DNA of 64,000 nucleotides, taken from IMG/VR virus record IMGVR_UViG_3300043446_004613, positions 124,001-188,000 of that record; one strand, given 5' to 3'. Under the pieces are notes generated by a model. It made no database searches. It had not been told where the DNA came from and worked only from the letters and a program-made list of their open reading frames with translations. The position numbers were made by a program, and so were the translations under genes. Positions 45-62,463 of the stretch are shown in pieces. How positions within the stretch are numbered: the first letter of the stretch is position 1; every line of letters starts with the position of its first letter.

Positions 45-980
45 TTGACATCTAATTTTATGCGTAGCCTAATTGCAATCAAAACCTATCGCCGACTCCA
101 CGCCCTCAAAGCTATGATGTCGGGCATCGAACAACACTGTCCGCAGTATCACTGCATTATCAGCGAAGACTGCGGTCAGCGTGATGGAACGACAGATTTC
201 ATTACTAAAGGCCGTGTCGGCACAGCTGTGCCGGAACTGCTGTCGACAAAGCATGTCGTTGAAAGCGGCGACGCTAACTTCATTAACGCAGATGTATACA
301 CTGGAGACGTAAATCTGGGTGTTACAGGCAACAACAACCGTTTGCTCAAGCTGTTCATGGATGGCGAGTGGGATCACCTGCTGCTGTGCGATGACGATTT
401 GCTCGTGACGGGTGATTTCGTTGAAGCATACGCGAACGCCCATGCAGACCTTGGTGTGGACATGTTTTGCTTCTGCGACTTCACTGAAGCATCTCCAGCC
501 ATATCCGGTGCCCCGGAAACGTATAAATGGACTACTTATCCGATGCGCGGTTATCAAGTAAAGTTTCTACCCCGCTTCACCGGCATCATGATGTCGGTAA
601 CACGCAGCCTCATTGAAAAGATAGGCTACATGGATGCCGAGTTCGGCAAGTTTGGAGAAGAACACTGCGACTGGACAATTCGTGCGCGTATGGCAGGCGG
701 CATACGTCTGAACAACACGGATATGAATTGTTTGGACATCGCCCATAACCGCCTGACCCATCAAAACGTACAGACCAGTATGTCAGGTTCAGCGCGTAAG
801 CACGCTGATCAAGAAGCCCACGTCGCTATGCAGCGGGCTGCCTATGAATACCGTTTGCGTCACTATTACCGGCCCTTCCGTCTTACCTATCCAGTGATGG
901 CGGCAGGCCATTCCGGTGTCGGCGTGCCCTGCCGCCAGCTGGATCAGATCGGCTATAGACTCGTGAACGCCCCTGCGTAG
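45..980 (+). CDS. glycosyltransferase family 2-like protein
   Basis: N-terminal LIAIKTYRR/IISEDCG, DxD motif (LLCDDD), C-terminal GYMDAEFGKFGEEHCDW typical of GT2; the real start may be ATG at 60. Confidence 0.7.
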   Translation: MTSNFMRSLIAIKTYRRLHALKAMMSGIEQHCPQYHCIISEDCGQRDGTTDFITKGRVGTAVPELLSTKHVVESGDANFINADVYTGDVNLGVTGNNNRLLKLFMDGEWDHLLLCDDDLLVTGDFVEAYANAHADLGVDMFCFCDFTEASPAISGAPETYKWTTYPMRGYQVKFLPRFTGIMMSVTRSLIEKIGYMDAEFGKFGEEHCDWTIRARMAGGIRLNNTDMNCLDIAHNRLTHQNVQTSMSGSARKHADQEAHVAMQRAAYEYRLRHYYRPFRLTYPVMAAGHSGVGVPCRQLDQIGYRLVNAPA

Positions 981-983
981 TTA
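977..983 (+). promoter_or_regulatory. GTAGTTA upstream motif (first of 15 copies, see findings)
   Basis: GTAGTTA ends 4 nt before the GTG at 988; its TAG is also the stop of the upstream gene. Confidence 0.55.
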
Positions 984-987
984 GGCT

Positions 988-1635
988 GTGACTAAGAATC
1001 CGCATCTGAAGAAATTACTCGGCGAATCGGAACACGACGAGGTTCACCGCTACGCCGATGCTATGCAGCAAACGCCGCAGAACGGACGCGAAGCATACCC
1101 AGATCAGCCTGAGCTTGCCTCTGCGTTTGATCGGCTGCATTTGCAGGATAAGTCGTTGGACGAACTGCGCGACATGGTTGCCAATCAAGCGCTAAACGGC
1201 TTTGAGCTTGAGGTCGTAAACAACGAGATCGAGTTTTTGAGCGGACTCTCTGAAAATCTCGAAGATCAGCAGAATATGCCCGCACGTCCAAAAGACGAGA
1301 CGCAGGACGACACGCCGATCAAGCCGAAAAGTAACAAGGCGGCCAGCTTCGGAAACGTCAACGTGGAACTGGCTCCGAGCGTGCGGGAATTGATCGGTCT
1401 TTGGAAGCGCGGCGAGCACATGGCAGTTGCCGCCCGCTTGATGTTCACGCCAGCGAGCTATGTCGATTTCATTGCGTTATCTTTTACCATTGGTCAAGCT
1501 GGTGCAATGGAATTGGCTGGTTTACTGGATGAACTTTCAGATACCGAAAATATGCGACCGCCGTCCACCCCGCCAGAGTACAAAGAATTGCTTCAAAAAG
1601 TCGCAGGAGCAAACGCAGAGGAAAACGTTATATGA
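988..1635 (+). CDS. hypothetical protein, candidate internal head protein
   Basis: 215-aa ORF, N-terminal HLKKLLGE motif, overlaps next start. Confidence 0.6.
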   Translation: MTKNPHLKKLLGESEHDEVHRYADAMQQTPQNGREAYPDQPELASAFDRLHLQDKSLDELRDMVANQALNGFELEVVNNEIEFLSGLSENLEDQQNMPARPKDETQDDTPIKPKSNKAASFGNVNVELAPSVRELIGLWKRGEHMAVAARLMFTPASYVDFIALSFTIGQAGAMELAGLLDELSDTENMRPPSTPPEYKELLQKVAGANAEENVI

Positions 1636-2399
1636 GCAGCAACCCCCTTTTAGCCCGCGCCCTTGGTGAATCAACCGGCGATGTCGTGCCGGTTCTCGCC
1701 AATGTACCGCGCAGCACGCAACGCAGTCGTCTTGAGCGCCTGCGCCAGCGCCGTGATCCAGAAGGTATTGAATCCAAAAATGAAAGCCATCGGCGCGACA
1801 TCTCGCGCCTGATCGGTGAATCTGAAACCGATGAGCAGCAAAAGCGCAGCGATAGCGTTATCCCGGACGAAGCAGAGGAGATTGATAAGAGCGCCTACAC
1901 TGTAGGCAAGCCGATTGATCCGCCCAAGAAAGTCGTGCAGGAACCGTCGCATCCAACAGCTGATAAGGAGAAGTACATTACTCCGGCATCTGCTTTGACT
2001 GCTCCCGATGCGACACCGCAGGCCACGCAGCCGCTAGACGCTTCACAGGTACCGATGCCCGGCGCATCCGGGCCTCAGCGATTTAGCGCATCCGACCTTG
2101 AAAAAGCCCCGGCAGCCCCAGCAGCCGGAAAAACGACAGCTGAAATCGATCCGCTGTCTGTACTACTTGGTCATGGTCGGGTACCGCGCCCTGCGCCCGA
2201 AATGCAAACGTTCCAGCAGGCAGGCAACATCAGCACTGAAGAAGCCCAGCGCATGGTTGGCGTACAGCCGATGCTTGCCGAGGAGGCCAAATCTCGAGCA
2301 GCAGCGGCGCTTCAACAGGGCGGCGTACCGATGCCTGAACCGAGCGCGCCAACAGACGGAAAGCGCGTTTTGGAAGCTTTCCGTCGTTTTGTCGTATGA
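1632..2399 (+). CDS. Pro/Ala-rich hypothetical protein, candidate internal head protein
   Basis: 255 aa; LARALGE and ISRLIGE motifs; 4-nt (ATGA) overlaps with both neighbours. Confidence 0.6.
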   Translation: MSSNPLLARALGESTGDVVPVLANVPRSTQRSRLERLRQRRDPEGIESKNESHRRDISRLIGESETDEQQKRSDSVIPDEAEEIDKSAYTVGKPIDPPKKVVQEPSHPTADKEKYITPASALTAPDATPQATQPLDASQVPMPGASGPQRFSASDLEKAPAAPAAGKTTAEIDPLSVLLGHGRVPRPAPEMQTFQQAGNISTEEAQRMVGVQPMLAEEAKSRAAAALQQGGVPMPEPSAPTDGKRVLEAFRRFVV

Positions 2400-2911: not shown

Positions 2912-3059
2912 TAACCGTAACGAGTATGCGGAACAGATCGTTGAACAGGTTATCGTAGACTCTGACCTGCTTTCCACCGATGACGTTGAAACAATCGACA
3001 CGTTTAACCATGTTTTAGCCAAGCTGCTGGCGTATGCGTCAGGCAGTCCGGTAGCTTGA
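2877..3059 (+). CDS. short ORF, possibly the frameshifted C-terminus of 2396-2911
   Basis: 60-aa acidic helical-looking ORF overlapping the previous gene in the +1 frame. Confidence 0.3.
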   Translation: MRKLNAGKISDDNRNEYAEQIVEQVIVDSDLLSTDDVETIDTFNHVLAKLLAYASGSPVA

Positions 3060-3078
3060 CCTATAACCACTTAAATCC

Positions 3079-10166: not shown

Positions 10167-11114
10167 TTATTCCGGCTTCCAGTTTTTCAACGAGTGTTCG
10201 AGCGCTTCTTCTACGCTACGAACTTTGATACCTGTAGATTTCAATTTAGAAACATCCATGATGCAATTGGAGCGCGGCGTCTTAGCGGCGACTTTGTAAA
10301 ACTCATCGTCATTCGCCCAGAACTCAAATTTCCGCGCGGGCTTCAGGTGCTTTTCAATGAGTGCTACAACGTGCCGCGTGGTGACATAGCCTTCATTGGT
10401 GAGGTTGTAAACGCCGAACGGGGCGCGGCGTTCCCATAAATCCAGACAGATGCTCGCGAACTCGGCGCGGTGCGAAATGGAATTTACGTTTTCGTAAGCC
10501 TTCACATAACGCTGCACTTTGCTCAAGTAATTGCGTTTATTGTCAAATTCATCGAACGGAATCCGCAATCGCCAGACGTAGCTCTGACCAATACCTGCCA
10601 TCGCTTCCTCACCCAGCGCCTTGGTGCCGCTATAAAAACTACACGGCTGGTCGCGAAAGGAAAAATTCGGAGTATCGTTTTCGGTGAAACCGAAAATAGA
10701 GGAGGATTTCTGCTCAGCCAAAGCATGCAGGTACGACTTAGTCATATCCTTCTCCACACGCATCTTTCCGTTCTCCAAAATTTTGGCTCCGCTGTAGATG
10801 CAACCAGAAGAGACGTGTCCCCACGGAATTCCCGCCGCCGCACACGCGTGAGCGATGGTCTGGGGTAGCAGCGTATTCCCGACCAGCGTGCCAGCCTTGT
10901 CCAACTCGCAGGCATCCACATTCGGTTTTCCGGTGTAACCCGCGCAGTTAGCCACAAACTCTGGCTTTTTGGCTCGCAAAAATTCCAGCAATAAATCAAA
11001 GCGGGAATAATCCACCTGACTACGCGAAAGGGTGATGAACTCTTTTTTACGACGGCGTAATTCCGTAACGAATGCTTCGCCGATATAGCCAGTGGCTCCG
11101 AGAAGTAGAATCAT
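10167..11114 (-). CDS. rmlD: NAD(P)-dependent nucleotide-sugar epimerase/reductase (RmlD family, NRS/ER-like)
   Basis: GATGYIG, CAGYTGKPNVDACE, HVSSGCIY and FYSGTK (YxxxK) motifs; lies between rmlA and rmlB fragments. Confidence 0.85.
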   Translation of the reverse strand: MILLLGATGYIGEAFVTELRRRKKEFITLSRSQVDYSRFDLLLEFLRAKKPEFVANCAGYTGKPNVDACELDKAGTLVGNTLLPQTIAHACAAAGIPWGHVSSGCIYSGAKILENGKMRVEKDMTKSYLHALAEQKSSSIFGFTENDTPNFSFRDQPCSFYSGTKALGEEAMAGIGQSYVWRLRIPFDEFDNKRNYLSKVQRYVKAYENVNSISHRAEFASICLDLWERRAPFGVYNLTNEGYVTTRHVVALIEKHLKPARKFEFWANDDEFYKVAAKTPRSNCIMDVSKLKSTGIKVRSVEEALEHSLKNWKPE

Positions 11115-31999: not shown

Positions 32000-32760
32000 T
32001 CTCTGTTGTCGTAAACCTCGATACGCGTCCCGGATGGAAACTAGAAGCGACTCTGGCAACAAGTACGCTCAACGGAACACGCTCAGTCGATTTTTTCACT
32101 GAGGGCTTGATCAATAAGCGAAAATTCTTTGCAGGACATGAAATCGAACTGATTGCTTACGTAGACGAGCACGAGCCTCTGGATGTTGCCGTAAGCGGCG
32201 CGGATAAGCTGGTGGTTGTACCACACAGCAAGGAACGCTACCGCTGGAACGACCATGTTTATCTGGATGCGCTGGCACACGCACAAGGCGACTACGTCTG
32301 TCACTTTGATCAGGATACGGTGGCGTTTTGTGTTGATGGTGCTGTTATCGAGCAATACCTCAAGTTGCTTGACTCCGGCGTCGCTAACTTTGTCAGCCTC
32401 CCTTTGCCATCTGAGCGGACAGATACCTATTGGTGGGCCAGCACACGGTTTTTCATCACCAAGCGGGAATTTTTACCGCTGGACGAAATTCGTCACTACA
32501 TCACTGATCCGCAGGCTCTCGTTGAAAAATACCGTTGGCCCGGAATATCTTCTTTCCCGTGCTTAGAGCACCTGCTTGGAGCAATGAACGCAGGTAAAGT
32601 GCTCTATCCGGTTCAAGATGGTAAGGCTCACATCTACTCATGGTACAACTATCGTCAGGGTGTGCTCGCTGATATGAACCGATTGAGCTACCCAGAGGTC
32701 TGTGCTTTCATTGAAAGCAAATGCGGTACCGGCGGTGCTGGTGAGCTTTACCTGAAATGA
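31996..32760 (+). CDS. putative GT-A fold glycosyltransferase
   Basis: ISVVVNL start, DYVCHFDQD (DxD); sits between two methyltransferases. Confidence 0.5.
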   Translation: MISVVVNLDTRPGWKLEATLATSTLNGTRSVDFFTEGLINKRKFFAGHEIELIAYVDEHEPLDVAVSGADKLVVVPHSKERYRWNDHVYLDALAHAQGDYVCHFDQDTVAFCVDGAVIEQYLKLLDSGVANFVSLPLPSERTDTYWWASTRFFITKREFLPLDEIRHYITDPQALVEKYRWPGISSFPCLEHLLGAMNAGKVLYPVQDGKAHIYSWYNYRQGVLADMNRLSYPEVCAFIESKCGTGGAGELYLK

Positions 32761-33338
32761 AAACGATTATTCACGTCGGCTGCGGCCCGATCTACATGGA
32801 GTCTGATAGGAACTACCGCTGGATAAACATGGACATCAATCCAGCTTTTAAGGCGGATATTACAGGTGATTGTAGACAGCTTAGCGTTCTGATTGGGAAT
32901 AACGTCGGTGACTACTTGTGGTCGTGCCATCATCTGGAGCATCTGCCTTACCCGGACGGTGTCCAAGAGACATTGCGCCAGTTCCTAGCGGTGCTTAAAC
33001 CCGGAGGAATTGCGCGTATCGCCACACCTGACCTTGAAACAGTAGCGCAGGCTTACTGTGACGGCAGCAGCTTGAAGTTCATCTACGGCGAAGACTTCAA
33101 GGGCTACGCGCATATCGACTGTCCGGCGGAGCGGTTCTTGTTTTTCATGCGTGCGTGGGAACACACGTTTATCCCCGATTTCGTCCTTTTGTCTACACTT
33201 ATGCGTGAAGCAGGCTTTGAAAACGTCCGCCGTTGTACCGCAAATCAAAGCGCCATACCCGGCTGGTGCCATGACCGGTTTCAATCTGAGAGCCTATACA
33301 TTGAAGGACAGAAACCTGCGCAGACCGAGTGTATTTAG
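32757..33338 (+). CDS. class I SAM-dependent methyltransferase
   Basis: IHVGCG, NMDI, HHLEHL and LKPGGIARIATPD motifs. Confidence 0.82.
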   Translation: MKTIIHVGCGPIYMESDRNYRWINMDINPAFKADITGDCRQLSVLIGNNVGDYLWSCHHLEHLPYPDGVQETLRQFLAVLKPGGIARIATPDLETVAQAYCDGSSLKFIYGEDFKGYAHIDCPAERFLFFMRAWEHTFIPDFVLLSTLMREAGFENVRRCTANQSAIPGWCHDRFQSESLYIEGQKPAQTECI

Positions 33339-38066: not shown

Positions 38067-39232
38067 ATCTATCCACGCCGACGCTTAACGCGCTTGCCAA
38101 GTTAAGACCGCCGTTCGCACGGTCGGCTACTTTCTTATACCCGTTCACAAACGAAGGCTTGGTAAACCCCGGAATCACTGTGCAGATGCCTGCCGGTGAG
38201 CCGGTCGTTGCCGCAGGTGCTGGAACGGTCGTTGATGTATACAGGCAGCTTCCGATCTACCAAGTTTCCGACAATACGCTGCTAAAAGCGGTGGTTTACT
38301 ACGTGGTCATTGCCCACGGCGGACTGGTGTTCACTACCGTCGCAGGTCTTTCTGGCGTGAACGTCGTTAAAGGTTCGACTGTTCAGCGCGGCCAGCGCAT
38401 CGGCACGATGTCTAGTGACAATCTGTTTGTAGCGGCTCAAATCGACAACAAGGCGATAAATCCGCTGACATTAAATAAGCACTGGGCAATCCAGAACTCG
38501 GCGTTTGTCGTCGGTCAGGGAAATAAGATTCGATTCGCTCCTGATCAACTGCTGCGCGATTTGAGTAATGGCATCGTGGTGTTCCTGCATAACGGTATAA
38601 AATATTTCAAGCAAGCAGTCGCGCCTACACCTTTTCTGGTCAATATTGCGTTTAATGGCGACGGTACAAAGACCGGGAGCGCAGCTACTGGCATCACCGC
38701 TGATGACTACTGGAACGATTATCTGCCTGAAGACTTTCAAGCACTTGTAGACTCTGCATGCTATTACCCTTACCTAGGTTCATTTGGGATACAAGCATAC
38801 GACTTCACTGCACAGCCGGTGCTCCACCTGAGCGATTACGCAGGTAATCGCAATCAGGTACTGCTTGAGCGCGTTGCTCCGATGCTTTCGGCAGCAAATA
38901 GCGGTTTGAGTTGGGATGCTATGCTTGCCCGCTGGATTGGTGGTTATCTCGGGCCAGTACCCTACGAAAATATCTTTCGCCTGCGTAACGTTCCACCGGG
39001 AACGTATACACTTTACCTGTACGCTAATGCAGGAACGCTTGGCAGCGCCAGCACGTTTTACGTGTCAATCAACAGCGGTACGCCGACAGTATTGACCAAC
39101 AATCCTGTGCTGACACCCGCTTTCATCGAACACTACAACTACGTAAAAATTGATGTTACGCTTGCACGCAACGACGCCCTCACAATCAAGACAATCGGTT
39201 ATCTGTCAGGATTGCAGCTTCAGCGGATTTAG
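38063..39232 (+). CDS. degenerate M23/LytM-like domain plus beta-sandwich domain, probably virion-associated
   Basis: GEPVVAAGAGTV...VVIAH...VVKGSTVQRGQRIG matches the M23 fold but the HxxxD and HxH ligands are missing. Confidence 0.55.
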   Translation: MNLSTPTLNALAKLRPPFARSATFLYPFTNEGLVNPGITVQMPAGEPVVAAGAGTVVDVYRQLPIYQVSDNTLLKAVVYYVVIAHGGLVFTTVAGLSGVNVVKGSTVQRGQRIGTMSSDNLFVAAQIDNKAINPLTLNKHWAIQNSAFVVGQGNKIRFAPDQLLRDLSNGIVVFLHNGIKYFKQAVAPTPFLVNIAFNGDGTKTGSAATGITADDYWNDYLPEDFQALVDSACYYPYLGSFGIQAYDFTAQPVLHLSDYAGNRNQVLLERVAPMLSAANSGLSWDAMLARWIGGYLGPVPYENIFRLRNVPPGTYTLYLYANAGTLGSASTFYVSINSGTPTVLTNNPVLTPAFIEHYNYVKIDVTLARNDALTIKTIGYLSGLQLQRI

Positions 39233-39813
39233 ACCGTAGCGCCGATGTCAATCAGGCTGCCTTGGCTACGATCATGGAAAAACGGTGACGGAAAAATCAC
39301 CGCACTATTGAACTTGCGCCAAAAATAAAGATCATCAGGGAACCCGTCGAATTCTACCGAGCGAAAGCGCAGCGCCGCTTCTGGTGTTATCCAGTATGCC
39401 ATGCAGCAGCCGTTTATGCCGGACGATTTATCATTCGTGTAAAGGCCGTAACCGAATCCAAGATCAGCAACCTTACTGTACGCATTTACATCGAATTCGC
39501 GCCCGTGGAGGCTGATAAAATCGAATCGGTAGAGGTGGGAAAAAGCCTCAAGCGCTATCCTTTGCCAGTGGTTACTGATAGGCACGGCATCGTCTTCAAA
39601 AACCAAGGCCGGGCCAACGGCTTCCGCTAGAGCGTCTTGGTGCCCGCGAAAAGCCCGCAGGTGACCTACCTTGTTTGGCACGATATTGTGCTGGTCGACC
39701 CACCCATCCGGCAGTTCGTAGTCAGCGCAGAAATGCTGGTTGTAGTTCAAGCCGCGCAGGTGCGGCAAAATAAGCGCTTTGCGCTTTGTGTTTGCGACAA
39801 CGATTATGTTCAT
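39229..39813 (-). CDS. glycosyltransferase family 25-like
   Basis: GHLRAFRGH, ALVFEDDA and AYWITPEAA motifs. Confidence 0.7.
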   Translation of the reverse strand: MNIIVVANTKRKALILPHLRGLNYNQHFCADYELPDGWVDQHNIVPNKVGHLRAFRGHQDALAEAVGPALVFEDDAVPISNHWQRIALEAFSHLYRFDFISLHGREFDVNAYSKVADLGFGYGLYTNDKSSGINGCCMAYWITPEAALRFRSVEFDGFPDDLYFWRKFNSAVIFPSPFFHDRSQGSLIDIGATV

Positions 39814-40817
39814 GACCAGATACCTGCTTCACGGAGTGCTGGCACAACGTGCTCTTCCATGTATACACTGTTAATGTAGCGCCTTGCTTGCACACAGCCT
39901 GCAACATAGATTCGATACAGGTTTGCGTGGAGCGCCTGCTCAATTTTGTCTACAGCAGCTTTGACATCTATCCAGTGCGGAGGATTGCGATTGGGCCGCG
40001 TAAGGTTGGGTAAAACCACGCAGTTAACGCCATCTGTCCAAGGGTACGTAAAATCCACGGGAGACTCTTGCATAGCCATGACGCTATTAAAACTGGCTTC
40101 AGCATGGCGAAAACATTTCCAAGACGCACCCCGTAGGCATAGCGACAACTTGGCCTTGCTTTGATACGCCATCAAAGTGTCCAAAGGTATACGGCGGTAA
40201 TGCGGTGTATACAGAATCGCTGTTTGGCGCTTATGCCCTTTTGCAAAAGCGTAGTCCAAGTCCTCAAGCGACGTACACAGACCATTGCACAGCTTTCTTT
40301 TAACAAGTTCAGCGTGTAAAAGCGGACGATCACACGAGCTAAAGCCGTATGAGTAGAATATGTCAATCGGACGTGCGTTAAATGCCTCTTCAGTATCCGG
40401 CTCGTGTGGAGAAAAAGTACTCGTAAAGTCGATAACCTTGAGCGGGAACGCTGTTGTTGGAACAGTGCGCTTGGAGAATTCGCGCTTAAAGTAAAGCTTC
40501 ACTGCTGGGGCAAGATCAGCACAAGGCTTGTAGGCGCTCAACTTGCCGGGCCAGTTAAAGCTGTTGGTCAGAATTATTTGATAATCGTTTTCGCACTCAA
40601 GGTAGTCAAACACGACAACGGGTTTACCTGACAGCAGCACAGCTTTTACAGTTTCCGGGTCACACACGTATTCAGGGTGCCATGTCCAAAGGTAAAAAAC
40701 GACGTCGGCCTCGTTCAAAGAGGTGACAAACTCTGAGTCGCGTAAACCTTTTACACGATCAAGCACGAAGCCATCGACTTCGACGTTGCCGCATGTTGTG
40801 GAGTAGACTTTCACCAT
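39810..40817 (-). CDS. GT-B glycosyltransferase (exostosin/GT47-like)
   Basis: LYFKRE, RPIDIF and SKAKLSLCLRG...CFRHAE motifs. Confidence 0.6.
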   Translation of the reverse strand: MVKVYSTTCGNVEVDGFVLDRVKGLRDSEFVTSLNEADVVFYLWTWHPEYVCDPETVKAVLLSGKPVVVFDYLECENDYQIILTNSFNWPGKLSAYKPCADLAPAVKLYFKREFSKRTVPTTAFPLKVIDFTSTFSPHEPDTEEAFNARPIDIFYSYGFSSCDRPLLHAELVKRKLCNGLCTSLEDLDYAFAKGHKRQTAILYTPHYRRIPLDTLMAYQSKAKLSLCLRGASWKCFRHAEASFNSVMAMQESPVDFTYPWTDGVNCVVLPNLTRPNRNPPHWIDVKAAVDKIEQALHANLYRIYVAGCVQARRYINSVYMEEHVVPALREAGIWS

Positions 40818-41461
40818 TGGCCTTCTCCAACAAAGTTATAGGCGACATCTTCCGATATTCCGTTTACACCGCTGCCGTATATTCCGATGTGCTGTGCTAG
40901 TGAGTGCTTGGTGGCAATCTTGCGCTCAAACACCTTACTGATGCAATGATCCCAGTTATGAACCCACCAGCTGACGGGCATCTCATCAAACACGCACTGG
41001 GCTGTAGCACGATCGACGAATTGAATTGCACCGCCTACGCCATCCACCACCACCCAATCTTCGTGCTCTTCGTAGACCTTCTGCGTAACAGAGCGGTATC
41101 CGGTGAGCACCGTTCGGCGGTGCGGGTCTTTTGTGACCTCCCACAGCTGGCGTAGGCGATAATCGAACTGAGCGCCAAGGAGCAGATCGTTGTCCATCGC
41201 TAACAGGTAACGATACTGCTCAGGCGAACTCAAAAAAGCTTTGTAGCGGTTGTACGCTGCCATACCGACACCCACATGTTCGACATGCTGCTGCACTGGC
41301 CAGTCCCAGCGGGACAGAAAATCTACGCCGTACTTTTCGCTCTTGTCGTCGATGATCAAGACGTCGCTGGCAGCGCTTTTGTTGCGCTTTAAGCTGTCCA
41401 ACGTAATTCCTGTCAGATCGCGGCGATTCCACGTAGACACGATGATGAGGATGTCTTTCAT
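40811..41461 (-). CDS. glycosyltransferase family 2
   Basis: IIVSTWNR, LIIDDKS and MDND (DxD) motifs. Confidence 0.78.
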   Translation of the reverse strand: MKDILIIVSTWNRRDLTGITLDSLKRNKSAASDVLIIDDKSEKYGVDFLSRWDWPVQQHVEHVGVGMAAYNRYKAFLSSPEQYRYLLAMDNDLLLGAQFDYRLRQLWEVTKDPHRRTVLTGYRSVTQKVYEEHEDWVVVDGVGGAIQFVDRATAQCVFDEMPVSWWVHNWDHCISKVFERKIATKHSLAQHIGIYGSGVNGISEDVAYNFVGEGQW

Positions 41462-42336
41462 GCCATGATGCGGAAATGTGTCCGCGTATTGTCTTCCTCA
41501 AAGATGTCGAGCTTGGTCTGGCTATAGGAGCGCTGCCACGATTCTTCAGTTGTGTTCTCGCCCGTCTGTCCAACGTGCCACGCACGGTTAACAAGAGCTA
41601 CCGCATGAGAAAATCCAGCTAGACGCAAGGCCAGCGCCATAGCCCCGTCTTGACTTGATACAGGGCGTGACGTGAAGTACTCCTTGGCTGGCCAATGAAC
41701 CGGAAACGGTCGATTGCCGCAATGGACAGGCAGGCGCTCAGCAATACCACGCATCCAGTCGCCGATGCGGGCGATGTCGCGATCTTTGTAGGGGCACTGG
41801 AGGAAGCGCTGGACATATTCTTGCATCCACGGACGGGTTAAAATCCAGCACTCGCGGCTCATCATGTGATTACACAAGCTATAGCCGCAGTCCGATACCA
41901 GTCCGAGACTGGCTTGCTTTTCTTCCAGCGGCATGTTGCAGAATACGGCTGTGCTGACAACACACTCGTTGCTGTAGTTGGCTTTTATCCAAGCCATCAT
42001 GTTCTGCAACAAAGTCATCAAGTGCGGAGACATGCGGATGTCGTCCTCGACGTAAAATACCCGGTCAAACTTGCACTCTTCAAACAGATAGCGTTTAGCC
42101 TCGTACACGTTTCGACCGATACCGTAGTGCTCTGGGCGCATCAGCAGGTGCAACCCCGGAATCTTTGCCCGTATAGCGATGGCTGCGTTTTCATACTGGG
42201 CAGCGTCAGGGCCTCCGTCGCACGCCAGAACGACCGGCATGCCCATGCGTACCTGCGGAAATGCCAGCACGTCTTGCAGCACTTGAGCAAGCATGCCGGG
42301 TCGGTTATAGCACGGTATTAAAATAGCGGTCTTCAC
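41458..42336 (-). CDS. glycosyltransferase, GT-A fold (GT2-like)
   Basis: ILIPCYNRP, LACDG, GIGRNV and YVEDD motifs. Confidence 0.75.
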   Translation of the reverse strand: MKTAILIPCYNRPGMLAQVLQDVLAFPQVRMGMPVVLACDGGPDAAQYENAAIAIRAKIPGLHLLMRPEHYGIGRNVYEAKRYLFEECKFDRVFYVEDDIRMSPHLMTLLQNMMAWIKANYSNECVVSTAVFCNMPLEEKQASLGLVSDCGYSLCNHMMSRECWILTRPWMQEYVQRFLQCPYKDRDIARIGDWMRGIAERLPVHCGNRPFPVHWPAKEYFTSRPVSSQDGAMALALRLAGFSHAVALVNRAWHVGQTGENTTEESWQRSYSQTKLDIFEEDNTRTHFRIMA

Positions 42337-44057
42337 GCGACAACGGTAGAACGTTTCACCGCAAAGAACCGAATTTCCTCGCCGTTACCGGATGCCCATA
42401 CTTTTTCGATCTCTGCATCAATCTCTTCGGTCTTCATGACGCGGTTTTCGCGCTCTTGGATTAAACGGCGCAGTTCGTTTAAGTCGTAATCGCCTGTATG
42501 CGTGTACACACGGAGTACGTCAAAACCGAACTTCTCAAGCGTCGCTTTCAAAGTTGCCGGACTGTAGTGGACATAGTGCGTGTTGACGTCCAGCCATTGC
42601 CATTTTTCTTTGCGCTGTTCGCTACAATACGATTCGATGTTAGGAACGATACCGGCGAAAATGCCTCCTACTTTTAAGAGTTTGCACACACGGCTTAAAA
42701 CCTCAGCTGGCTTGGAAAGGTGCTCGAACGTGTGGATAGCGACAATCACGTCAAGGCTGTCGGCATCAATCGCACAATCCAGCAGTTCGTCGCAGGTGGT
42801 AGGTATGCCGAGCACAGAGTTGCTAAAATTGGCCGCCTTGTAGCAAACGTCGATACCCTGCGGCGTGAATCCCTTCTCGCGAGCATTTACCATGAAGGCA
42901 CCCCAGCCGCAGCCAATGTCCAGCATCTTACCGGGCGGTTTGGCGAATTCCATAAGCTGCTGCATGAAGTAGTCACGACGCAGTCCGCTCGTACGGATGT
43001 CGTCAAAATTCTTCGGCAGGCGCATGTGTGAGTGGTCATCGGCGTACTGCTGATAATAGAGCATCGTCTGCTCATGATCCGGGTGCGTGCGCAGATACAC
43101 GAGATTGCAGCTTGGGCACTTTACGATGTCAGTCTGCGCTCGATGCTGCGGAGCGTTGGCGGCATCTGCGTCGCAGATGGGACATTTTGTTAACACGGTA
43201 TTCATAGATTTTTTGTATAGTTTTGGTATATGAACAATAGCGCTTTCGCCGTAAATCGCGTTGCGCCGGTTGAAAATGCAGTTCGGGCCTTCGAGCCACA
43301 CTTCGAGCATGCTGTCGTGCTTCAAGCCTTCACAGATGGCGTAAGGCAGCGACTGGTTTCCAATGTACAAGCGGCAACCCGCTATGAGACGCGCAAGTTC
43401 AAGGAAGTCTTTTGTCGGCAAATACGTCAAATAACCCCAGTCAGCAACGAACGCGTTGTACTCGCTAGGCAATCCGACAAAGGCCGCTCTTTTGCCGTGA
43501 CGCTCCATGATCTTCGCCCACGGAAAATCAGAATTACGCCAACGCGGGCTGCGGTGGATAAGAACTGGATAGTCATTTAGCTCAGTGGGAGTGTCGATCG
43601 TAAGCCACGCGGATTGACAGGCATCTAGCGGCACTTTGAACGTGTATAGATGAGCTTCCGCTAGGTTGAGTCGCCGTGCGCCTTCCGCCATTTTGGTGTG
43701 CTCCGTCAGCAGGTATTCACGGAACTGGTTCAAGTCGATGTCGATTTCAGGGGCTTTTTCTACAAAGCTCAGTTCGTGGATATACGGTTGCATTTCCAGC
43801 AGAGGTCGCATTACTTCTACATGCTCTGCTGTCATCGACAAACGTGTCTTGTGTTGAACACTTGGGCCGATAAACAAGCTGCCGCCGCCCATCGCTTTTA
43901 TGGTCGGCAGCGCGTAAATGATGTCGCCAAAGTCACCGCTATGGAAAAACGAAAGACGGTGCTTCAGTGGAATGACGACGCTTCTTTCGGCAGACACGGG
44001 ATCAAAGTGTTCTGCTTTTAGCTTTTTAGCGATGTATTCAAACGATTTCACTAGCAA
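42333..44057 (-). CDS. fusion of a GT9-like glycosyltransferase and a Zn-binding class I methyltransferase
   Basis: HSGDFGDIIYALP and LIAGCRLYIGNQS (GT9-like); CPIC...CPSC, LDIGCGWG, HTFEH (methyltransferase). Confidence 0.75.
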   Translation of the reverse strand: MLVKSFEYIAKKLKAEHFDPVSAERSVVIPLKHRLSFFHSGDFGDIIYALPTIKAMGGGSLFIGPSVQHKTRLSMTAEHVEVMRPLLEMQPYIHELSFVEKAPEIDIDLNQFREYLLTEHTKMAEGARRLNLAEAHLYTFKVPLDACQSAWLTIDTPTELNDYPVLIHRSPRWRNSDFPWAKIMERHGKRAAFVGLPSEYNAFVADWGYLTYLPTKDFLELARLIAGCRLYIGNQSLPYAICEGLKHDSMLEVWLEGPNCIFNRRNAIYGESAIVHIPKLYKKSMNTVLTKCPICDADAANAPQHRAQTDIVKCPSCNLVYLRTHPDHEQTMLYYQQYADDHSHMRLPKNFDDIRTSGLRRDYFMQQLMEFAKPPGKMLDIGCGWGAFMVNAREKGFTPQGIDVCYKAANFSNSVLGIPTTCDELLDCAIDADSLDVIVAIHTFEHLSKPAEVLSRVCKLLKVGGIFAGIVPNIESYCSEQRKEKWQWLDVNTHYVHYSPATLKATLEKFGFDVLRVYTHTGDYDLNELRRLIQERENRVMKTEEIDAEIEKVWASGNGEEIRFFAVKRSTVVA

Positions 44058-44598
44058 AACGGGTTACGTAATGAGCCGCACTGTCGATTTCTGTCACGAT
44101 CTCGAACTGTTTCCTGAACTCCACAGGGTTTTCTGTAAAGCTCGCTGGAAAGAACCGGTAAAATCCCCAGCAATCACGATGACCTTCTACGATCACAAGC
44201 TTTCTGTCTTTTAACGCATAGACCCGCTGTTGGCGCAGTAAAGTGATCGAGTTCTTGGCCCGTTTGTCCATGTGTGCCCGGATATAGGCTGGATCGTAAA
44301 CAGCATCAGGTAGCCAGTTGAAGCACCATTCACCGATGGCATTATCGCGGCAAAGCTGAAGCATTGCCGGTACGGATTGGCGGCTGAGTTGAATCTCCAG
44401 AAAGTTAGGCCACCGCTTAAACCAAGGCTTGAGCTTGCTATTGGTCGTATTGTATACAACCATCTGCTTATTCGGCCAGTCTTGGTTGTAAAATGAAGCG
44501 ATGCTTGCTCTCGCGGCGGTTAGCTGCTGGGGACGGGTAAACGCCATGAGTCCCGATGCGATCGGGTATTCAATCCAACTGGTGTCGTTCTCAGGCAC
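44038..44598 (-). CDS. degenerate GT2-like protein
   Basis: TRPQQL...SF.NQDWPNKQMVVYN and GEWCFNW.PDAVY pattern, but no intact DxD. Confidence 0.45.
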   Translation of the reverse strand: MPENDTSWIEYPIASGLMAFTRPQQLTAARASIASFYNQDWPNKQMVVYNTTNSKLKPWFKRWPNFLEIQLSRQSVPAMLQLCRDNAIGEWCFNWLPDAVYDPAYIRAHMDKRAKNSITLLRQQRVYALKDRKLVIVEGHRDCWGFYRFFPASFTENPVEFRKQFEIVTEIDSAAHYVTRFASEIV

Positions 44599-59504: not shown

Positions 59505-59507
59505 AGG

Positions 59508-60638: not shown

Positions 60639-60645
60639 GTTTTAA

Positions 60646-61104
60646 TTATTCGCGTGGCGGCTCAGGCAAAGCAATCTCTTCTTCGCCAGCACCTTCAGGT
60701 GAAGCCAGTTGTTCGGCTGTTTCTGCCTCGCTGGGTTCTTCGCCGGGTTCAGGCAGACCAGCTTCTGGGCCGCCTTCGACCGGAGCTTCCATGCTCTCAG
60801 GCTCTTGTGTCGGCACCTCTTGCGCGTCTTCTGGCGCACCGGCATCTGGCGGCGCATTAGGCGGGAGCGGGATAGCCATATCGCTTTCCGCATCACCTTC
60901 GCCCTCACCTTCACCCTTGCCTTCATCCTCCTCTTCGCCGGGGCCGGGCACGCGTTCCATGTACCACTGCCATTCCGCGTTGAGTTCGTCGGCAACAGGA
61001 TCACTGTGGTTATTGGCCAGCGCTGCTGCGATCGCCTCGATTTGACCCCAGCTAAGTTCTAACTTATAATCGTTATAAGTTTTTTTAATCTTTTCGAGTT
61101 TCAT
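60646..61104 (-). CDS. acidic Glu/Pro-rich hypothetical protein
   Basis: 152 aa with a low-complexity C-terminal half. Confidence 0.6.
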   Translation of the reverse strand: MKLEKIKKTYNDYKLELSWGQIEAIAAALANNHSDPVADELNAEWQWYMERVPGPGEEEDEGKGEGEGEGDAESDMAIPLPPNAPPDAGAPEDAQEVPTQEPESMEAPVEGGPEAGLPEPGEEPSEAETAEQLASPEGAGEEEIALPEPPRE

Positions 61105-61290
61105 GGTTTTGCTTTATTTTTGTGTAAACGCGGACGCACCAGTCGTAAAACTCGGCCAAGCTGTTATCGCTTTTAGCATAGTTGCATACTTTACAGCAGG
61201 GAACTGCGTTTTCAGGAACGTACGCCATATCATTATCTACACGATCAAGATCGCTATAGTTAAAGCCGCCGTTTATTCCGTAGCCGTGTA
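61085..61290 (-). pseudogene. remnant of an HNH endonuclease gene
   Basis: frame reads DLDRVDNDMAYVPENAVPCCKVCNYAKS...EFYDWC, the C-terminal half of phage HNH nucleases; no N-terminal part. Confidence 0.6.
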
Positions 61291-61326
61291 TAAGAACAGA
61301 ATCGGCGGCTTGCTGTTCTTAACACC

Positions 61327-62463
61327 ATGAATCTGATCACATTCAATGACCCGATCACAATCGCCTTCAAGAAAAGCGCCGGTGGCGTCACTCAAACCTT
61401 TGAAGCCAACCGTCCATACCTGATCGCCAATGCGCAGATTGAGCGCATCATGCGCGATCAACAAGTCAGCGGACGCGCTTACAAAATCAGCCGCGCCGAC
61501 ACACGTATTCCGAACGCGCATAAAGCCGCTTTCAACCGTAATGACAGCGTTCTGATCTACAACGGCAGCGGCGGCTACGGCGACCAGATTTTGACTTGGC
61601 CGGTGGCGCGTTATCTTGCCAATCAGGGTTTGAAAGTCCACGTCTTAACTGACCCCGGCAACAACGTATGCTGGTGGGGATTTGACTTCGTCAAGACGGT
61701 GAACACGATTCCGTTGCTTTGGGAGACTGTTCAGCTATATGACCACTTCATCCACTGGGAGGCGGTGGTTAACATGGACGAGCATCAGGATCAGGAGCAT
61801 CCGATTGACATGATGTTCCGCAAGATAGGCTACGATCCGGCGGATATTTCGGCTGAGGACAAGTGCGTGCGCCCTGTGTTTACGCCAAGTGAACTAGGCA
61901 CCTTGAACAAATACGTGACTTCCGGCAAGCGCGTCGGTCTTTACCAGCTATCCAGTGCCAATCCAGTGCGCTGCCTGCCTGCGGCGGACAGCGTGTTCTT
62001 GATCATGAAGATTGCTGAAGCCTATCCTGACATTCACTGGCTCTGCCTGCATGACGAGTTTGTGCCCAAGGAGTACAAAGAGACACTGGCTGTTGAAATT
62101 ACCAAGCGCGGTTTTACGAATGTGGAAGGTTTTACGGCTCCTAATCTGCGCGAACTGTGGGCGCTGACAGAGCACGTGAATGTGGTTATCAGCCCTGACA
62201 GCATGATGGCCCACATCGCCGGAGCTTTCGGTACTCCCTGCGTAGGTCTTTGGGGGCCGATGTCACCGGAAAGTCGGATGAAATACTACAAGAACCACCA
62301 CCCGATCTACCATCGCGAGTTCTGCCCGCACAGCCCCTGCTTTGTATACAGTAACACATTCCCGAAATATTGTCCGCCTCGCGCAAATCGCAATGTCTGC
62401 GACGTTATGGCCGGTATTTCGCCTTCGGAAGTGATTAGCGCTATCGGTCACATCTGTAGATAG
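61327..62463 (+). CDS. glycosyltransferase family 9 (heptosyltransferase-like)
   Basis: GGYGDQILTWP and VISPDSMMAHIAGAFGTPCVGLWGP signature. Confidence 0.85.
   Translation: MNLITFNDPITIAFKKSAGGVTQTFEANRPYLIANAQIERIMRDQQVSGRAYKISRADTRIPNAHKAAFNRNDSVLIYNGSGGYGDQILTWPVARYLANQGLKVHVLTDPGNNVCWWGFDFVKTVNTIPLLWETVQLYDHFIHWEAVVNMDEHQDQEHPIDMMFRKIGYDPADISAEDKCVRPVFTPSELGTLNKYVTSGKRVGLYQLSSANPVRCLPAADSVFLIMKIAEAYPDIHWLCLHDEFVPKEYKETLAVEITKRGFTNVEGFTAPNLRELWALTEHVNVVISPDSMMAHIAGAFGTPCVGLWGPMSPESRMKYYKNHHPIYHREFCPHSPCFVYSNTFPKYCPPRANRNVCDVMAGISPSEVISAIGHICR

What the first reader, a model, noticed from the sequence alone, without database searches (positions are those of the whole stretch)
45..62463. 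Phage-encoded glycan assembly line: about 9 glycosyltransferase and 3 methyltransferase domains among virion genes
Seen: GT-like ORFs at 45, 31996, 39229, 39810, 40811, 41458, 42333, 44038 and 61327, spanning GT2, GT25, GT47-like and GT9-like types; SAM methyltransferase domains at 31337, 32757 and the C-terminus of 42333; a nucleotide-sugar epimerase/reductase at 10167. Known: some mycobacteriophages glycosylate capsid/tail proteins with a few GTs, and chloroviruses and mimiviruses build methylated virion glycans, whereas DNA-glucosylating phages need only one or two enzymes. Inference: this many families suggests a complex, O-methylated oligosaccharide on the virion, or remodelling of host LPS/capsule. 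This is the best candidate here for an undescribed system.
Basis: partly seen in the sequence, partly recalled or inferred. Interest (0 to 1): 0.82.

Follow-up and report, generated by a model that had tools for sequence, protein, structure and literature searches.

The report
Sugar-building gene set in giant phage
A roughly 211-kb freshwater T4-like phage carries an unusually large, strain-variable set of soluble sugar-adding and sugar-decorating enzymes among its particle genes, but similar gene islands are already known in aquatic T4-like phages and sequence alone cannot say what the sugars are attached to.

Summary
The window is bases 124001-188000 of a 211,113-bp freshwater T4-like myovirus contig. 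Of nine claimed glycosyltransferase (GT) domains, eight are supported: GT2/GT-A at 45, 31996, 40811 and 41458; GT25-like at 39229; a GT-B like RXYLT1/GT47 at 39810; GT9 at 61327; and a compact GT9-like domain at the N-terminus of 42333. ORF 44038 is weak. The methyltransferases at 31337 and the C-terminus of 42333 are supported; 32757 is weak. ORF 10167 is an RmlD-type reductase.

The set extends past the window: another GT9, another GT2, two sulfotransferases and a polysaccharide pyruvyltransferase lie to its left.

It is not one assembly line. There are four dispersed loci. One is a strain-specific insertion, one is a variable cassette at a fixed hotspot, and two are conserved in synteny.

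All the enzymes are soluble. No DNA-hypermodification partner genes were found in about half the genome.

The acceptor is unresolved: virion proteins 0.4, host envelope glycoconjugates 0.33, DNA 0.08. GT-rich islands are already described in pelagimyophages, cyanomyophages and moraphages, so this is a new member of a known kind. Two by-products: a large Pfam-less GT9-like family, and a candidate late-gene motif, GTAGTTA.

The parts
45..980 (+). GT-A / GT2-like glycosyltransferase lying directly upstream of the head module
   Evidence: phrog_2456 glycosyltransferase 1.1e-21. Pfam Glyco_tranf_2_3 3.1e-4, below cut-off. DDD motif. A 63% identical copy sits at the same place before the protease and capsid genes in L106.
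10167..11114 (-). RmlD-type NDP-4-keto-6-deoxyhexose reductase, possibly a bifunctional epimerase/reductase; of bacterial origin
   Evidence: PF04321 1.4e-26 and TIGR01214 4.9e-24, below the equivalog cut-off. GxxGxxG and YxxxK motifs. 80-92% identical to more than 120 clusters, including proteins of bacterial MAGs. In one bacterium it sits between an NTP-transferase and a 4,6-dehydratase with no RmlC.
31337..31999 (+). Class I SAM methyltransferase (Methyltransf_24 type); first gene of a strain-specific island
   Evidence: PF13578 3.8e-6, 28.2 bits against a cut-off of 26.3. The island is absent from 10 relatives.
31996..32760 (+). GT-A fold glycosyltransferase; middle gene of the island
   Evidence: No Pfam, PHROG or NCBIfam hit. 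Atlas model TM 0.58-0.65 to GT2 clusters; nearest cluster is viral, with 180 members. DQD motif.
32757..33338 (+). Probable class I SAM methyltransferase (weak); last gene of the island
   Evidence: Methyltransf_23 1.3e-4, below cut-off. VGCG motif I. No match among solved structures.
39229..39813 (-). GT25-like glycosyltransferase
   Evidence: 3 of 60 homologues carry PF01755, and one is named a GR25 LPS glycosyltransferase. E73-D74-D75 invariant.
39810..40817 (-). GT-B fold glycosyltransferase resembling RXYLT1_C / Exostosin-GT47 / Glyco_trans_1_2
   Evidence: Atlas features 0.96-0.97 and structure TM 0.65-0.71. No sequence-family hit.
40811..41461 (-). GT2 glycosyltransferase
   Evidence: PF00535 5.6e-5, 23.6 bits against 23.3. 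DND motif.
41458..42336 (-). GT2 glycosyltransferase
   Evidence: PF13641 5e-6, 27.1 bits against 27; also weak PF00535 and GNT-I hits. EDD motif.
42336..43040 (-). C-terminal class I SAM methyltransferase domain of the 574-aa fusion protein
   Evidence: Methyltransf_23 5.8e-22. Full-length AF2 model pLDDT 89.6. Top PDB matches are the NDP-sugar C-methyltransferases MtmC and KijD1, but generic methyltransferases score about the same.
43083..43193 (-). Cys4 zinc-ribbon linker of the fusion protein (CPICD...CPSC)
   Evidence: Sequence. Weak zinc-finger family hits at residues 285-350. Small beta strands in the model.
43203..43970 (-). Compact (~240 aa) GT9-like GT-B domain of a family that has no Pfam model
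   Evidence: AF2 model pLDDT 93.6. Top PDB matches are all GT9 structures or the GT9-related heptosyltransferase TibC. Viral matches at TMq 0.74-0.78 include Pithovirus and Klosneuvirus proteins. 188 relatives in IMG/VR. 3474 representatives in the 50%-identity library. Fused elsewhere to GT1/GT4, GT25, DUF5672, GH130-like and TylF/Methyltransf_24 domains.
44038..44598 (-). Possible short GT-A-like protein (weak), always next to or fused with the GT9-like domain
   Evidence: Atlas features 0.95 to phage GT2 clusters, 168 shared features. No family hit. hhalign against the 40811 family was negative. A single Asp is conserved at the expected DxD position. Fused to the GT9-like domain in L014.
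61327..62463 (+). GT9 (heptosyltransferase-family) glycosyltransferase, conserved after the portal and baseplate block
   Evidence: PF01075 2.6e-10. Weak heptosyltransferase I/II/III NCBIfam hits. GD and DS..H motifs. 42-78% identical copies in synteny in 11 relatives.

Best explanation
The window belongs to a ~211-kb freshwater T4-like myovirus that carries a dispersed, partly strain-variable toolkit of soluble glycan-building enzymes.

Content:
- at least 8-9 glycosyltransferase (GT) domains in the window and at least 11 in the genome, of GT-A/GT2, GT25-like, GT9 and GT9-like, and RXYLT1/GT47-like GT-B types;
- three SAM methyltransferases;
- a bacterial-type RmlD-like 6-deoxyhexose reductase;
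- just outside the window, two sulfotransferases and a polysaccharide pyruvyltransferase.

Proposed mechanism:
- Host nucleotide-sugars, partly tailored by the phage reductase, are added stepwise in the cytoplasm by the soluble GTs.
- The methyl-, sulfo- and pyruvyl-transferases then decorate the sugars.
- The product is a decorated heteroglycan containing 6-deoxyhexose.

My preferred acceptor is the phage's own structural proteins, so that the glycan ends up on the virion. Known precedents are mycobacteriophage capsid and tail glycosylation, and the methylated, pyruvylated rhamnose-containing fibril glycans of Mimivirus.

Shown: enzyme folds and families, solubility, gene positions, and conservation pattern. 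Inferred: the order of reactions, the sugars used, and the acceptor.
For: Enzyme identities.

All GTs and MTs lack hydrophobic segments, and the window encodes no polytopic membrane protein such as a flippase, polymerase or initiating transferase.

The genes sit inside or beside virion modules:
- GT2 45-980 ends 7 nt before the head operon.
- The 31337-33338 island lies inside a gap-free same-strand run from the sheath gene to 33698.
- GT9 61327 follows the portal, gp25 and collagen-like fibre block in 11 relatives.
- The sulfotransferases and pyruvyltransferase lie next to neck gene gp13.
- In relatives L014-L020 the cassette is co-directional with the baseplate genes that follow a GTAGTTA motif.

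In about 20 unrelated smaller phages the GT9-like gene lies next to the large terminase or the portal.

The GT9-like domain's closest structural relatives include giant-virus proteins from Pithovirus and Klosneuvirus (TMq 0.74). Their hosts have no LPS. Virus-encoded GTs in giant viruses build virion glycans carrying rhamnose, O-methyl and pyruvate (PMC8456856).

TibC, a protein O-heptosyltransferase, is among the top PDB matches.

A candidate acceptor, a protein with collagen-like G-X-Y runs, lies at 56709-58043.
Against: - No experiment or read data bear on the acceptor.
- No T4-like phage has been shown to glycosylate its virion.
- The capsid, tube and sheath proteins have no Ser/Thr-rich C-terminal extension like the mycobacteriophage acceptors.
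- The main cassette 39229-44598 and the reductase are on the minus strand, which carries none of the GTAGTTA motifs found before structural genes. Their timing may therefore be early or middle.
- GT9 61327 is followed on the same strand by a helicase.
- GT9, GT25 and pyruvyltransferase families act mainly on LPS and polysaccharides in bacteria. LPS-core GTs are also soluble, so solubility does not exclude a host-envelope target.
Confidence: 0.4

Rival explanations
1. Host envelope remodelling. The soluble GTs act at the cytoplasmic face of the inner membrane on lipid A-core or undecaprenyl-linked intermediates, and host machinery exports the product. Infected cells then display an altered LPS core, O-chain or exopolysaccharide. 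This would block superinfection or stop progeny adsorbing to doomed cells.
For: - GT9, GT25, GT2 and polysaccharide pyruvyltransferase are typical LPS and polysaccharide families.
- The GT25-like gene has a 38% identical homologue inside a bacterial multi-GT cluster.
- The reductase is 80-92% identical to bacterial rhamnose-pathway genes.
- Strain-level variability of the cassette resembles O-antigen diversity.
- This is the explanation given for pelagimyophage and cyanomyophage GT islands (PMC7029224, PMC12801897).
- The cassette and the reductase share a strand with DNA-metabolism genes and lack the motif seen before structural genes. That fits early expression.
Against: - Surface seroconversion is proven only for temperate phages. 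No integrase or lysogeny gene was seen in the parts inspected.
- There is no flippase, polymerase, initiating transferase or Gtr-type membrane protein.
- Pre-existing receptors are not removed by new synthesis during a lytic cycle.
- The GT9-like family also occurs in giant viruses of eukaryotes.
- Part of the set is embedded in a late-looking tail operon.
Confidence: 0.33
2. DNA glycan hypermodification. Some of the GTs attach mono- to trisaccharides to a hydroxymethylated base in phage DNA to evade restriction and other defences, as in T-even phages and the C5-methyltransferase/TET-associated GT clusters.
For: - The phage is T4-like, with Gp23, S77 protease, T4-type portal, gp25 and gp13.
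- Phage GTs of GT-A and GT-B folds related to LPS enzymes can put hexose, HexNAc or heptose on 5hmC, and such clusters can lie among structural genes (bioRxiv 10.1101/2023.12.21.572611).
- About 105 kb of the genome was not inspected.
Against: - No cytosine C5-methyltransferase, TET/JBP dioxygenase or thymidylate-synthase-like hydroxymethylase was found by Pfam in the ~105 kb inspected, including everything next to the GTs.
- Known DNA glycans need one to three GTs, not eleven.
- Sulfotransferases, a polysaccharide pyruvyltransferase and sugar-type methyltransferases have no known role on DNA.
- The replication module uses PolA and DnaB rather than T4-type enzymes.
Confidence: 0.08
3. No common pathway. 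The loci are independent accessory genes gathered at different times, with different and possibly unrelated targets: part on the virion, part on the host surface, part on small molecules or defence-related substrates.
For: - There are four loci with different conservation: a strain-specific island, a variable hotspot cassette, and two syntenic conserved genes.
- Strand and neighbours are mixed.
- The reductase was recently acquired from bacteria.
Against: - Within the cassette, genes overlap by 4-20 nt, which suggests co-translation.
- The GT9-like domain recurs as a fusion or neighbour of methyltransferases and other GTs across hundreds of phages. That points to joint action, at least for the cassette.
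Confidence: 0.15

Closest known systems
GT-rich hypervariable islands of aquatic T4-like myoviruses: the pelagimyophage 'host recognition cluster', cyanomyophages such as S-SCSM2R and P-SSM2, and moraphage core GT groups
   Same: Large T4-like or jumbo aquatic phages. Many GTs and sugar-nucleotide genes are interleaved with structural modules. Content varies between relatives. Function is unproven (PMC7029224, PMC12801897, PMC12619734).
   Different: This is a different clade: the capsid protein is under 30% identical to any sequenced phage, and it is from freshwater. The repertoire is dominated by GT9 and GT9-like enzymes rather than GT8. It includes a GT9-like / zinc-ribbon / methyltransferase fusion, sulfotransferases and a pyruvyltransferase.
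Mycobacteriophage virion glycosylation (Che8, Corndog, Myrna; Freeman et al. 2023, known to me only through citations in PMC12619734 and PMC11256854)
   Same: Phage-encoded soluble GTs lie next to capsid and tail genes.
   Different: Those phages have two to a few GTs, and the acceptors are C-terminal extensions of the capsid and tail-tube subunits. No such extension is present here. Virion glycan is demonstrated there and not here.
Giant-virus virion glycan machineries: Mimivirus fibril polysaccharides and the chlorovirus capsid glycans with the GT-GT-methyltransferase protein A064R
   Same: Many soluble virus-encoded GTs, GT-methyltransferase fusions, rhamnose-type sugar synthesis, and O-methyl and pyruvate decorations (PMC8456856; the A064R architecture is from my own knowledge). 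The GT9-like domain has TMq 0.74 matches in Pithovirus and Klosneuvirus.
   Different: Those are eukaryotic viruses with complete nucleotide-sugar pathways. This phage has only one sugar-tailoring enzyme in the inspected half. The product is unknown.
LPS inner-core heptosyltransferases WaaC and WaaF (CAZy GT9) and the protein heptosyltransferase TibC
   Same: GT-B fold and N-terminal G-D motif. These are the best structural matches for the 42333 N-domain. 61327 passes the Pfam GT9 threshold.
   Different: The N-domain is about 90 residues shorter, gets no Pfam hit, and has an invariant N-Q-S where GT9 has D-S/T-G. Donor and acceptor are untested.
C5-methyltransferase / 5mYOX-dependent DNA glycan clusters and T-even DNA glucosyltransferases
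   Same: Phage GTs related to LPS enzymes, sometimes among structural genes.
   Different: The partner enzymes were not found in the inspected half of the genome. There are far more GTs here, plus sugar-decorating enzymes.

Membership tests
GT9 (Pfam PF01075, CAZy GT9) - ORF 61327 | Sequence match above the curated Pfam threshold | tested here: met
   40.5 bits against a cut-off of 22, E 2.6e-10
GT9 - ORF 61327 | N-terminal G-D motif and C-terminal D-S/T-G..H nucleotide-sugar motif | tested here: met
   GYGDQIL and PDSMMAHIAGAFGTP in the sequence
GT9 - N-terminal domain of ORF 42333 | Sequence match above the curated Pfam threshold | tested here: not met
   No Pfam, PHROG or NCBIfam hit in residues 1-350. 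None of 68 homologues has a Pfam hit on this domain. BLASTP against 61327 found nothing.
GT9 - N-terminal domain of ORF 42333 | GT-B fold most similar to solved GT9 enzymes | tested here: met
   Model pLDDT 93.6. Ranks 1-28 in the PDB search are GT9 structures or TibC, E 1.8e-7 to 3e-4.
GT9 - N-terminal domain of ORF 42333 | Catalytic and donor-binding D-S/T-G motif | tested here: not met
   An invariant G-N-Q-S replaces it. The N-terminal G-D motif is kept.
GT9 - both proteins | Use of ADP-heptose as donor | not testable with these tools
   Needs an enzyme assay
GT2 (PF00535 / PF13641) - ORFs 40811 and 41458 | Pfam threshold and DxD motif | tested here: met
   23.6 bits against 23.3 and 27.1 bits against 27. 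DND and EDD motifs. Both pass only narrowly.
GT2 - ORF 45-980 | Pfam threshold and DxD motif | tested here: inconclusive
   Pfam 21.3 bits, below the cut-off of 27, but phage GT families match at 1.1e-21 and a DDD motif is present.
GT2 / GT-A - ORF 31996 | GT-A fold and DxD motif | tested here: met
   Atlas structure TM 0.58-0.65 to GT2 clusters. DQD motif. No sequence-family membership.
GT2 / GT-A - ORF 44038 | GT-A fold or sequence match, and DxD motif | tested here: inconclusive
   Only language-model similarity. hhalign against a window GT2 family was negative. Only one Asp is conserved.
GT25 (PF01755) - ORF 39229 | Sequence match and acidic E-D-D motif | tested here: inconclusive
   No direct hit. 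3 of 60 homologues carry PF01755. E-D-D is invariant. The profile found only Mimivirus R655 in the PDB, at E 0.34.
GT47 / RXYLT1-like GT-B - ORF 39810 | GT-B fold close to Exostosin/RXYLT1_C families | tested here: met
   TM 0.65-0.71 to clusters carrying PF24785, PF03016 or PF13524. This is fold level only; there is no sequence-family hit.
dTDP-4-dehydrorhamnose reductase RmlD (TIGR01214) - ORF 10167 | Equivalog score and SDR catalytic motifs | tested here: inconclusive
   84.9 bits against a cut-off of 224. Motifs present. The bacterial operon context lacks RmlC, which suggests a bifunctional epimerase/reductase type.
Mycobacteriophage-type virion glycosylation | GT genes adjacent to capsid and tail genes | tested here: met
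Mycobacteriophage-type virion glycosylation | Ser/Thr/Ala/Gly/Pro-rich C-terminal extension on the capsid or tail-tube subunit | tested here: not met
   The C-termini of the capsid, tube-region and sheath proteins are ordinary.
Mycobacteriophage-type virion glycosylation | Glycan detected on virions | not testable with these tools
   Metagenomic phage with no isolate
C5-MT/TET-dependent or hmC-dependent DNA glycosylation | A cytosine C5-methyltransferase plus TET/JBP dioxygenase, or a dCMP/dUMP hydroxymethylase, in the genome | tested here: inconclusive
   None found in the ~105 kb inspected. About 105 kb was not inspected.
Gtr-type O-antigen seroconversion (gtrABC) | Polytopic membrane flippase and membrane GT, in a temperate phage | tested here: not met
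   No multi-span protein in the window. No integrase seen in the inspected regions.

The most novel reading that the evidence does not exclude
A bacteriophage builds, with its own soluble enzymes alone, a giant-virus-like decorated heteroglycan coat on its virion. The glycan would contain 6-deoxyhexose and be O-methylated, sulfated and pyruvylated. It could sit, for example, on the collagen-like fibre protein at 56709-58043 or on the capsid. The Pfam-less compact GT9-like domain, shared with Pithovirus and Klosneuvirus, would be a virus-wide protein-glycosylating enzyme family.
Probability: 0.3. Interest if true: 0.8.

Novelty: new member of a known kind. Interest (0 to 1): 0.5.

Why it matters
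If the glycan sits on the virion, this would extend phage particle glycosylation from actinobacteriophages to T4-like jumbo phages of aquatic bacteria. It would also link phage and giant-virus glycan machineries through a shared enzyme family.

If the glycan sits on the host, it would be a concrete case of a lytic phage rewriting the cell surface.

Either way, what the abundant GT islands of aquatic myoviruses do is still an open question. This genome offers a compact, well-defined cassette to test: GT2-like, then the GT9-like / zinc-ribbon / methyltransferase fusion, two GT2s, a GT-B and a GT25.

The GT9-like domain family has about 3,500 representatives at 50% identity and no Pfam model. It deserves a family definition and a biochemical assay.

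Tried and rejected
- Near-identical DNA search of phage GenBank records: no match. tblastn of the 574-aa fusion against phages: no match.
- T4 late promoter TATAAATA: 0 sites.
- Sigma-70 promoter and terminator scan of 28.5-47 kb: counts equal to shuffles, so uninformative.
- BLASTP of the 42333 N-domain against GT9 61327: nothing.
- Sequence searches of solved structures gave nothing useful: N-domain as a single sequence and as a profile, GT25 profile, 61327, 46762, 14700, 58365, 32757 and 31337.
- Foldseek with the full-length fusion was swamped by methyltransferase hits, so the N-domain had to be modelled alone.
- hhalign of the 44038 family against the 40811 family: negative.
- Pfam on 20 neighbouring ORFs of the head and tail regions: almost all orphans.
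- RNA runs: only a soil metatranscriptome holding 4% of capsid-gene words, and nothing laid on the island.
- Laying DNA contigs on the island showed it present at about 24x depth with no island-less form.
- I first took 46762-50070 for a tape-measure gene with a chaperone frameshift upstream. The upstream gene is a Cpn10 co-chaperonin, so I dropped that reading.

Full report
WHAT THE WINDOW IS

The window corresponds to bases 124001-188000 of a 211,113-bp viral contig, IMGVR_UViG_3300043446_004613 (JGI Ga0451716_0000011). I derived the offset. Near-identical contigs occur in a second JGI sample and in two freshwater-metagenome runs.

It is a T4-like myovirus. The marker genes are:
- an S77 prohead protease at 3484 and a Gp23-family major capsid protein at 5216;
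- a tail sheath at 26671;
- a baseplate hub OB domain at 36191 and an M23 peptidase at 38063;
- a T4-type portal at 53612 and gp25 at 55585;
- gp13 just left of the window.

It is far from any sequenced phage. There is no nucleotide match, and the capsid protein is under 30% identical to any phage record. Most neighbouring ORFs are orphans. Replication genes left of the window are PolA and DnaB, not T4-type.

CHECK OF THE OBSERVATION

Direct family matches support:
- GT2 for 40811 and 41458, GT9 for 61327, a strong methyltransferase at the C-terminus of 42333, and an RmlD-type reductase at 10167;
- a Methyltransf_24 domain at 31337 and a weak methyltransferase at 32757;
- phage glycosyltransferase families for 45-980.

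Four ORFs and the N-terminal 350 residues of 42333 had no hit in Pfam, PHROGs or NCBIfam. They needed other evidence.
- 39810 has a stored model that matches GT-B families of the RXYLT1 / Exostosin-GT47 / Glyco_trans_1_2 group at TM 0.65-0.71.
- 31996 has a model that matches GT2 clusters at TM about 0.6, and it has a DQD motif.
- 39229 has 60 homologues, three of which carry the GT25 domain. Its E-D-D triad is invariant.
- For the 42333 N-domain I built an alignment of 30 homologues. The AlphaFold model has pLDDT 93.6. Its 28 best PDB matches are all GT9 enzymes or the GT9-related protein heptosyltransferase TibC.
- 44038 remains weak. It has only language-model similarity to phage GT2 clusters, a negative profile comparison with a window GT2, and a single conserved Asp where DxD is expected.

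The tally is eight solid GT domains plus one doubtful, two solid methyltransferases plus one doubtful, and one reductase.

THE SET IS LARGER THAN THE WINDOW

Reading 10 kb to the left found a further GT9 of 410 aa (1.2e-7) and a 511-aa protein with a GT2 domain.

Another 10-18 kb to the left, next to neck gene gp13 and a lysozyme, lie three more glycan enzymes:
- two Sulfotransfer_4 proteins (2e-20 and 4.8e-21);
- a polysaccharide pyruvyltransferase (3.1e-9).

The genome therefore encodes at least 11 GT domains, 3 methyltransferases, 2 sulfotransferases, 1 pyruvyltransferase and 1 sugar reductase.

ANATOMY: FOUR LOCI, NOT ONE LINE

(a) Head-proximal locus. GT9 and GT2 lie on the minus strand just left of the window, and GT2 45-980 lies on the plus strand, ending 7 nt before the head operon. 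A close relative, with a capsid protein 87% identical, keeps a 63% identical GT2 in the same place.

(b) The methyltransferase-GT-methyltransferase island 31337-33338. It lies in a gap-free same-strand run from the sheath gene to 33698. In all 10 clade relatives whose DNA I fetched, the flanking genes (homologues of 30778 and 33345, 53-81% identical) are directly adjacent. The island is therefore a recent insertion in this strain. In the two source runs it is present at about 24x depth, with no island-less form.

(c) The cassette 39229-44598 on the minus strand, with overlapping genes. It lies between the M23 peptidase / baseplate block and the primase.
- Every relative has a 4-7 gene cassette at this hotspot.
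- The cassette always begins with the 44038-type protein and the GT9-like domain, separate or fused. The other members change.
- In L014-L020 the cassette is inverted relative to this phage and is co-directional with the baseplate genes.

(d) GT9 61327. It is conserved at 42-78% identity in 11 relatives, after the portal, gp25 and collagen-like protein block. In this genome it is followed by a helicase.

THE GT9-LIKE DOMAIN FAMILY

The domain is about 240 residues long and carries the motifs HSGDxGDIIY and IGNQSxP.
- No Pfam model hit it in the copy searched, and none of its 68 homologues carries a precomputed Pfam hit on this domain.
- It has 188 confirmed relatives in IMG/VR.
- It has 3,474 representatives (1,851 at E below 1e-30) in the 50%-identity library.
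- It occurs alone or fused to GT1/GT4, GT25, DUF5672, GH130-like, TylF/Methyltransf_24 or FkbM-type domains.
- A Methyltransf_11 gene is its neighbour in 16 loci, and a cytidylyltransferase in 6.
- In about 20 smaller phages it sits next to the large terminase, and in 5 next to a portal.
- Its best viral structural matches include Pithovirus and Klosneuvirus proteins at TMq 0.74.

In the window protein it is joined through a Cys4 zinc ribbon to the methyltransferase. The closest solved structures to that part are the zinc-containing NDP-sugar C-methyltransferases MtmC and KijD1. Generic class I methyltransferases score almost as well, so I do not claim C-methylation.

THE REDUCTASE

ORF 10167 is 80-92% identical to more than 120 distinct clusters, including proteins from bacterial genome bins. 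In one bacterial genome its 83% homologue sits between a nucleotidyltransferase and a 4,6-dehydratase, with no RmlC.

This looks like a recently captured bacterial gene. It is possibly of the bifunctional 3,5-epimerase/4-reductase type that makes NDP-rhamnose in three steps. That last point is an inference from the operon content. It argues that the glycan contains a 6-deoxyhexose.

WHAT THE GLYCAN IS ATTACHED TO

Nothing in the sequence settles this.

Facts that bear on it:
- No GT or methyltransferase has a hydrophobic segment. The window has no flippase, polymerase or initiating transferase. This excludes a self-contained Gtr- or Wzy-type system. It does not exclude action on LPS core, whose enzymes are also soluble.
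- No cytosine C5-methyltransferase, TET-type dioxygenase or hydroxymethylase was found in the roughly 105 kb inspected, including all GT neighbourhoods. Sulfo-, pyruvyl- and sugar-type methyl-transferases make little sense on DNA. This lowers the DNA hypermodification reading described by Pyle et al..
- Positions next to head, tail, baseplate and neck genes favour a virion target. So do the terminase/portal neighbourhood in other phages, the giant-virus relatives of the GT9-like domain, and TibC among the structural matches.
- Mimivirus shows that virus-encoded soluble enzymes can build rhamnose-containing, O-methylated and pyruvylated glycans on particle fibrils (PMC8456856).
- A possible acceptor is the protein at 56709-58043, which has two collagen-like G-X-Y runs and a Ser/Thr-rich C-terminal half.

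Against the virion reading:
- The capsid, tube-region and sheath proteins have no mycobacteriophage-style C-terminal extension.
- The main cassette and the reductase are on the strand that carries DNA-metabolism genes. That strand has none of the GTAGTTA motifs that precede structural genes.

I rank virion glycosylation at 0.4, host envelope remodelling at 0.33, unrelated mixed functions at 0.15 and DNA modification at 0.08.

COMPARISON WITH WHAT IS KNOWN, AND NOVELTY

GT-rich variable islands inside the structural regions of aquatic T4-like myoviruses have been described:
- in pelagimyophages, as a 'host recognition cluster' with many LPS-type GTs (PMC7029224);
- in cyanomyovirus S-SCSM2R, with 13 GTs in at least seven families (PMC12801897);
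- in the jumbo 'moraphages', with four core GT groups (PMC12619734).

Their function is unproven in every case. This window is a new example in a new freshwater clade, so I file it as a new member of a known kind.

Three things are specific to it:
- the GT9-heavy repertoire;
- the GT9-like / zinc-ribbon / methyltransferase fusion, from a large family without a Pfam model;
- the sulfo- and pyruvyl-transferases, which bring the toolkit close to giant-virus complexity.

VERDICT

Interest is moderate at 0.5. The finding is a good test bed for an open question rather than a new kind of system.

Noticed in passing
window, 16 sites: 977, 7265, 8928, 11436, 13871, 14677, 19874, 21634, 25003, 25128, 26610, 26649, 37222, 46751, 53597, 56695: The heptamer GTAGTTA occurs 16 times against 3.9 +/- 1.8 expected, and every copy is on the + strand. 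Thirteen copies lie 11-23 nt before a start codon, including the sheath, portal and collagen-like fibre genes. The motif recurs 11-15 nt before ORF starts in clade relatives and is absent from unrelated phage loci. The T4 late promoter TATAAATA is absent. This is a candidate late-gene promoter or translation-initiation element for the clade.
   Followed up: partly
window 62451-62485 and 62527-62561: A direct repeat of about 30 bp (CATCTGTAGATAGTTCATGAACGATGAACCG) occurs twice, at the end of GT9 gene 61327 and just before 62543. The related GTAGATAGTT also precedes 6891.
   Followed up: no
window 56709-58043 (+): A 444-aa protein has two collagen-like G-X-Y runs (GEQGPPGPKGAPGPQGPPGTGGVGSPG and GPAGPTGPTG) and a Ser/Thr-rich C-terminal half. 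It follows gp25, is preceded by GTAGTTA, and is conserved in 11 relatives. It is probably a fibre protein and a possible glycan acceptor.
   Followed up: partly
window 10167-11114 (-): The RmlD-like reductase is 80-92% identical to more than 120 distinct protein clusters, including proteins from Verrucomicrobia and Acidobacteria bins. That is far more conserved than any structural gene of the phage. It points to recent capture from bacteria and may hint at the host.
   Followed up: partly
window 43203-43970 (-) and loci L012-L089: The compact GT9-like domain belongs to a large family without a Pfam model, with 3,474 representatives at 50% identity. The family has many multidomain architectures and has members in giant viruses.
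   Followed up: yes
L108:11864-13849 (about 15-18 kb left of the window in the same genome): Two sulfotransferases and a polysaccharide pyruvyltransferase lie next to the gp13 neck gene and a 450-aa lysozyme-domain protein.
   Followed up: partly
window 59508-60638 (-) and 58365-59504 (-): Two adjacent proteins of about 377 aa. The first has weak Ig-domain and Hint / homing-endonuclease-Hint hits (4e-5), which may indicate a self-cleaving or intein-like module in a structural protein.
   Followed up: no
window 45894-46520 (+); L091:4673-14676 (right of the window); L108:1-4259: Three unusual accessory features: a 208-aa Cpn10/GroES-like co-chaperonin next to the primase; a 2,127-aa protein with a PhoD domain and a 2'-5' RNA ligase right of the window; and PolA and DnaB replication genes in a phage with T4-type structural genes.
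   Followed up: no
L008 (Logan SRR11594358_9590, 106.6-kb contig): An unrelated large phage carries an even denser glycan cluster around a GT25-like homologue: NeuB, HAD phosphatases, GT2, GT11, GT10, WavE, several methyltransferases, a radical SAM enzyme and an NTP-transferase.
   Followed up: no
L007:5736-7446 and L007:7443-8970: In the 228.6-kb relative, the orthologues of the GT9-like/methyltransferase fusion and of the two GT2 genes are called as split or merged ORFs (202+376 aa; 85+433 aa). These may be frameshifts or assembly errors. A second contig with the same GT25-like protein has them intact.
   Followed up: no
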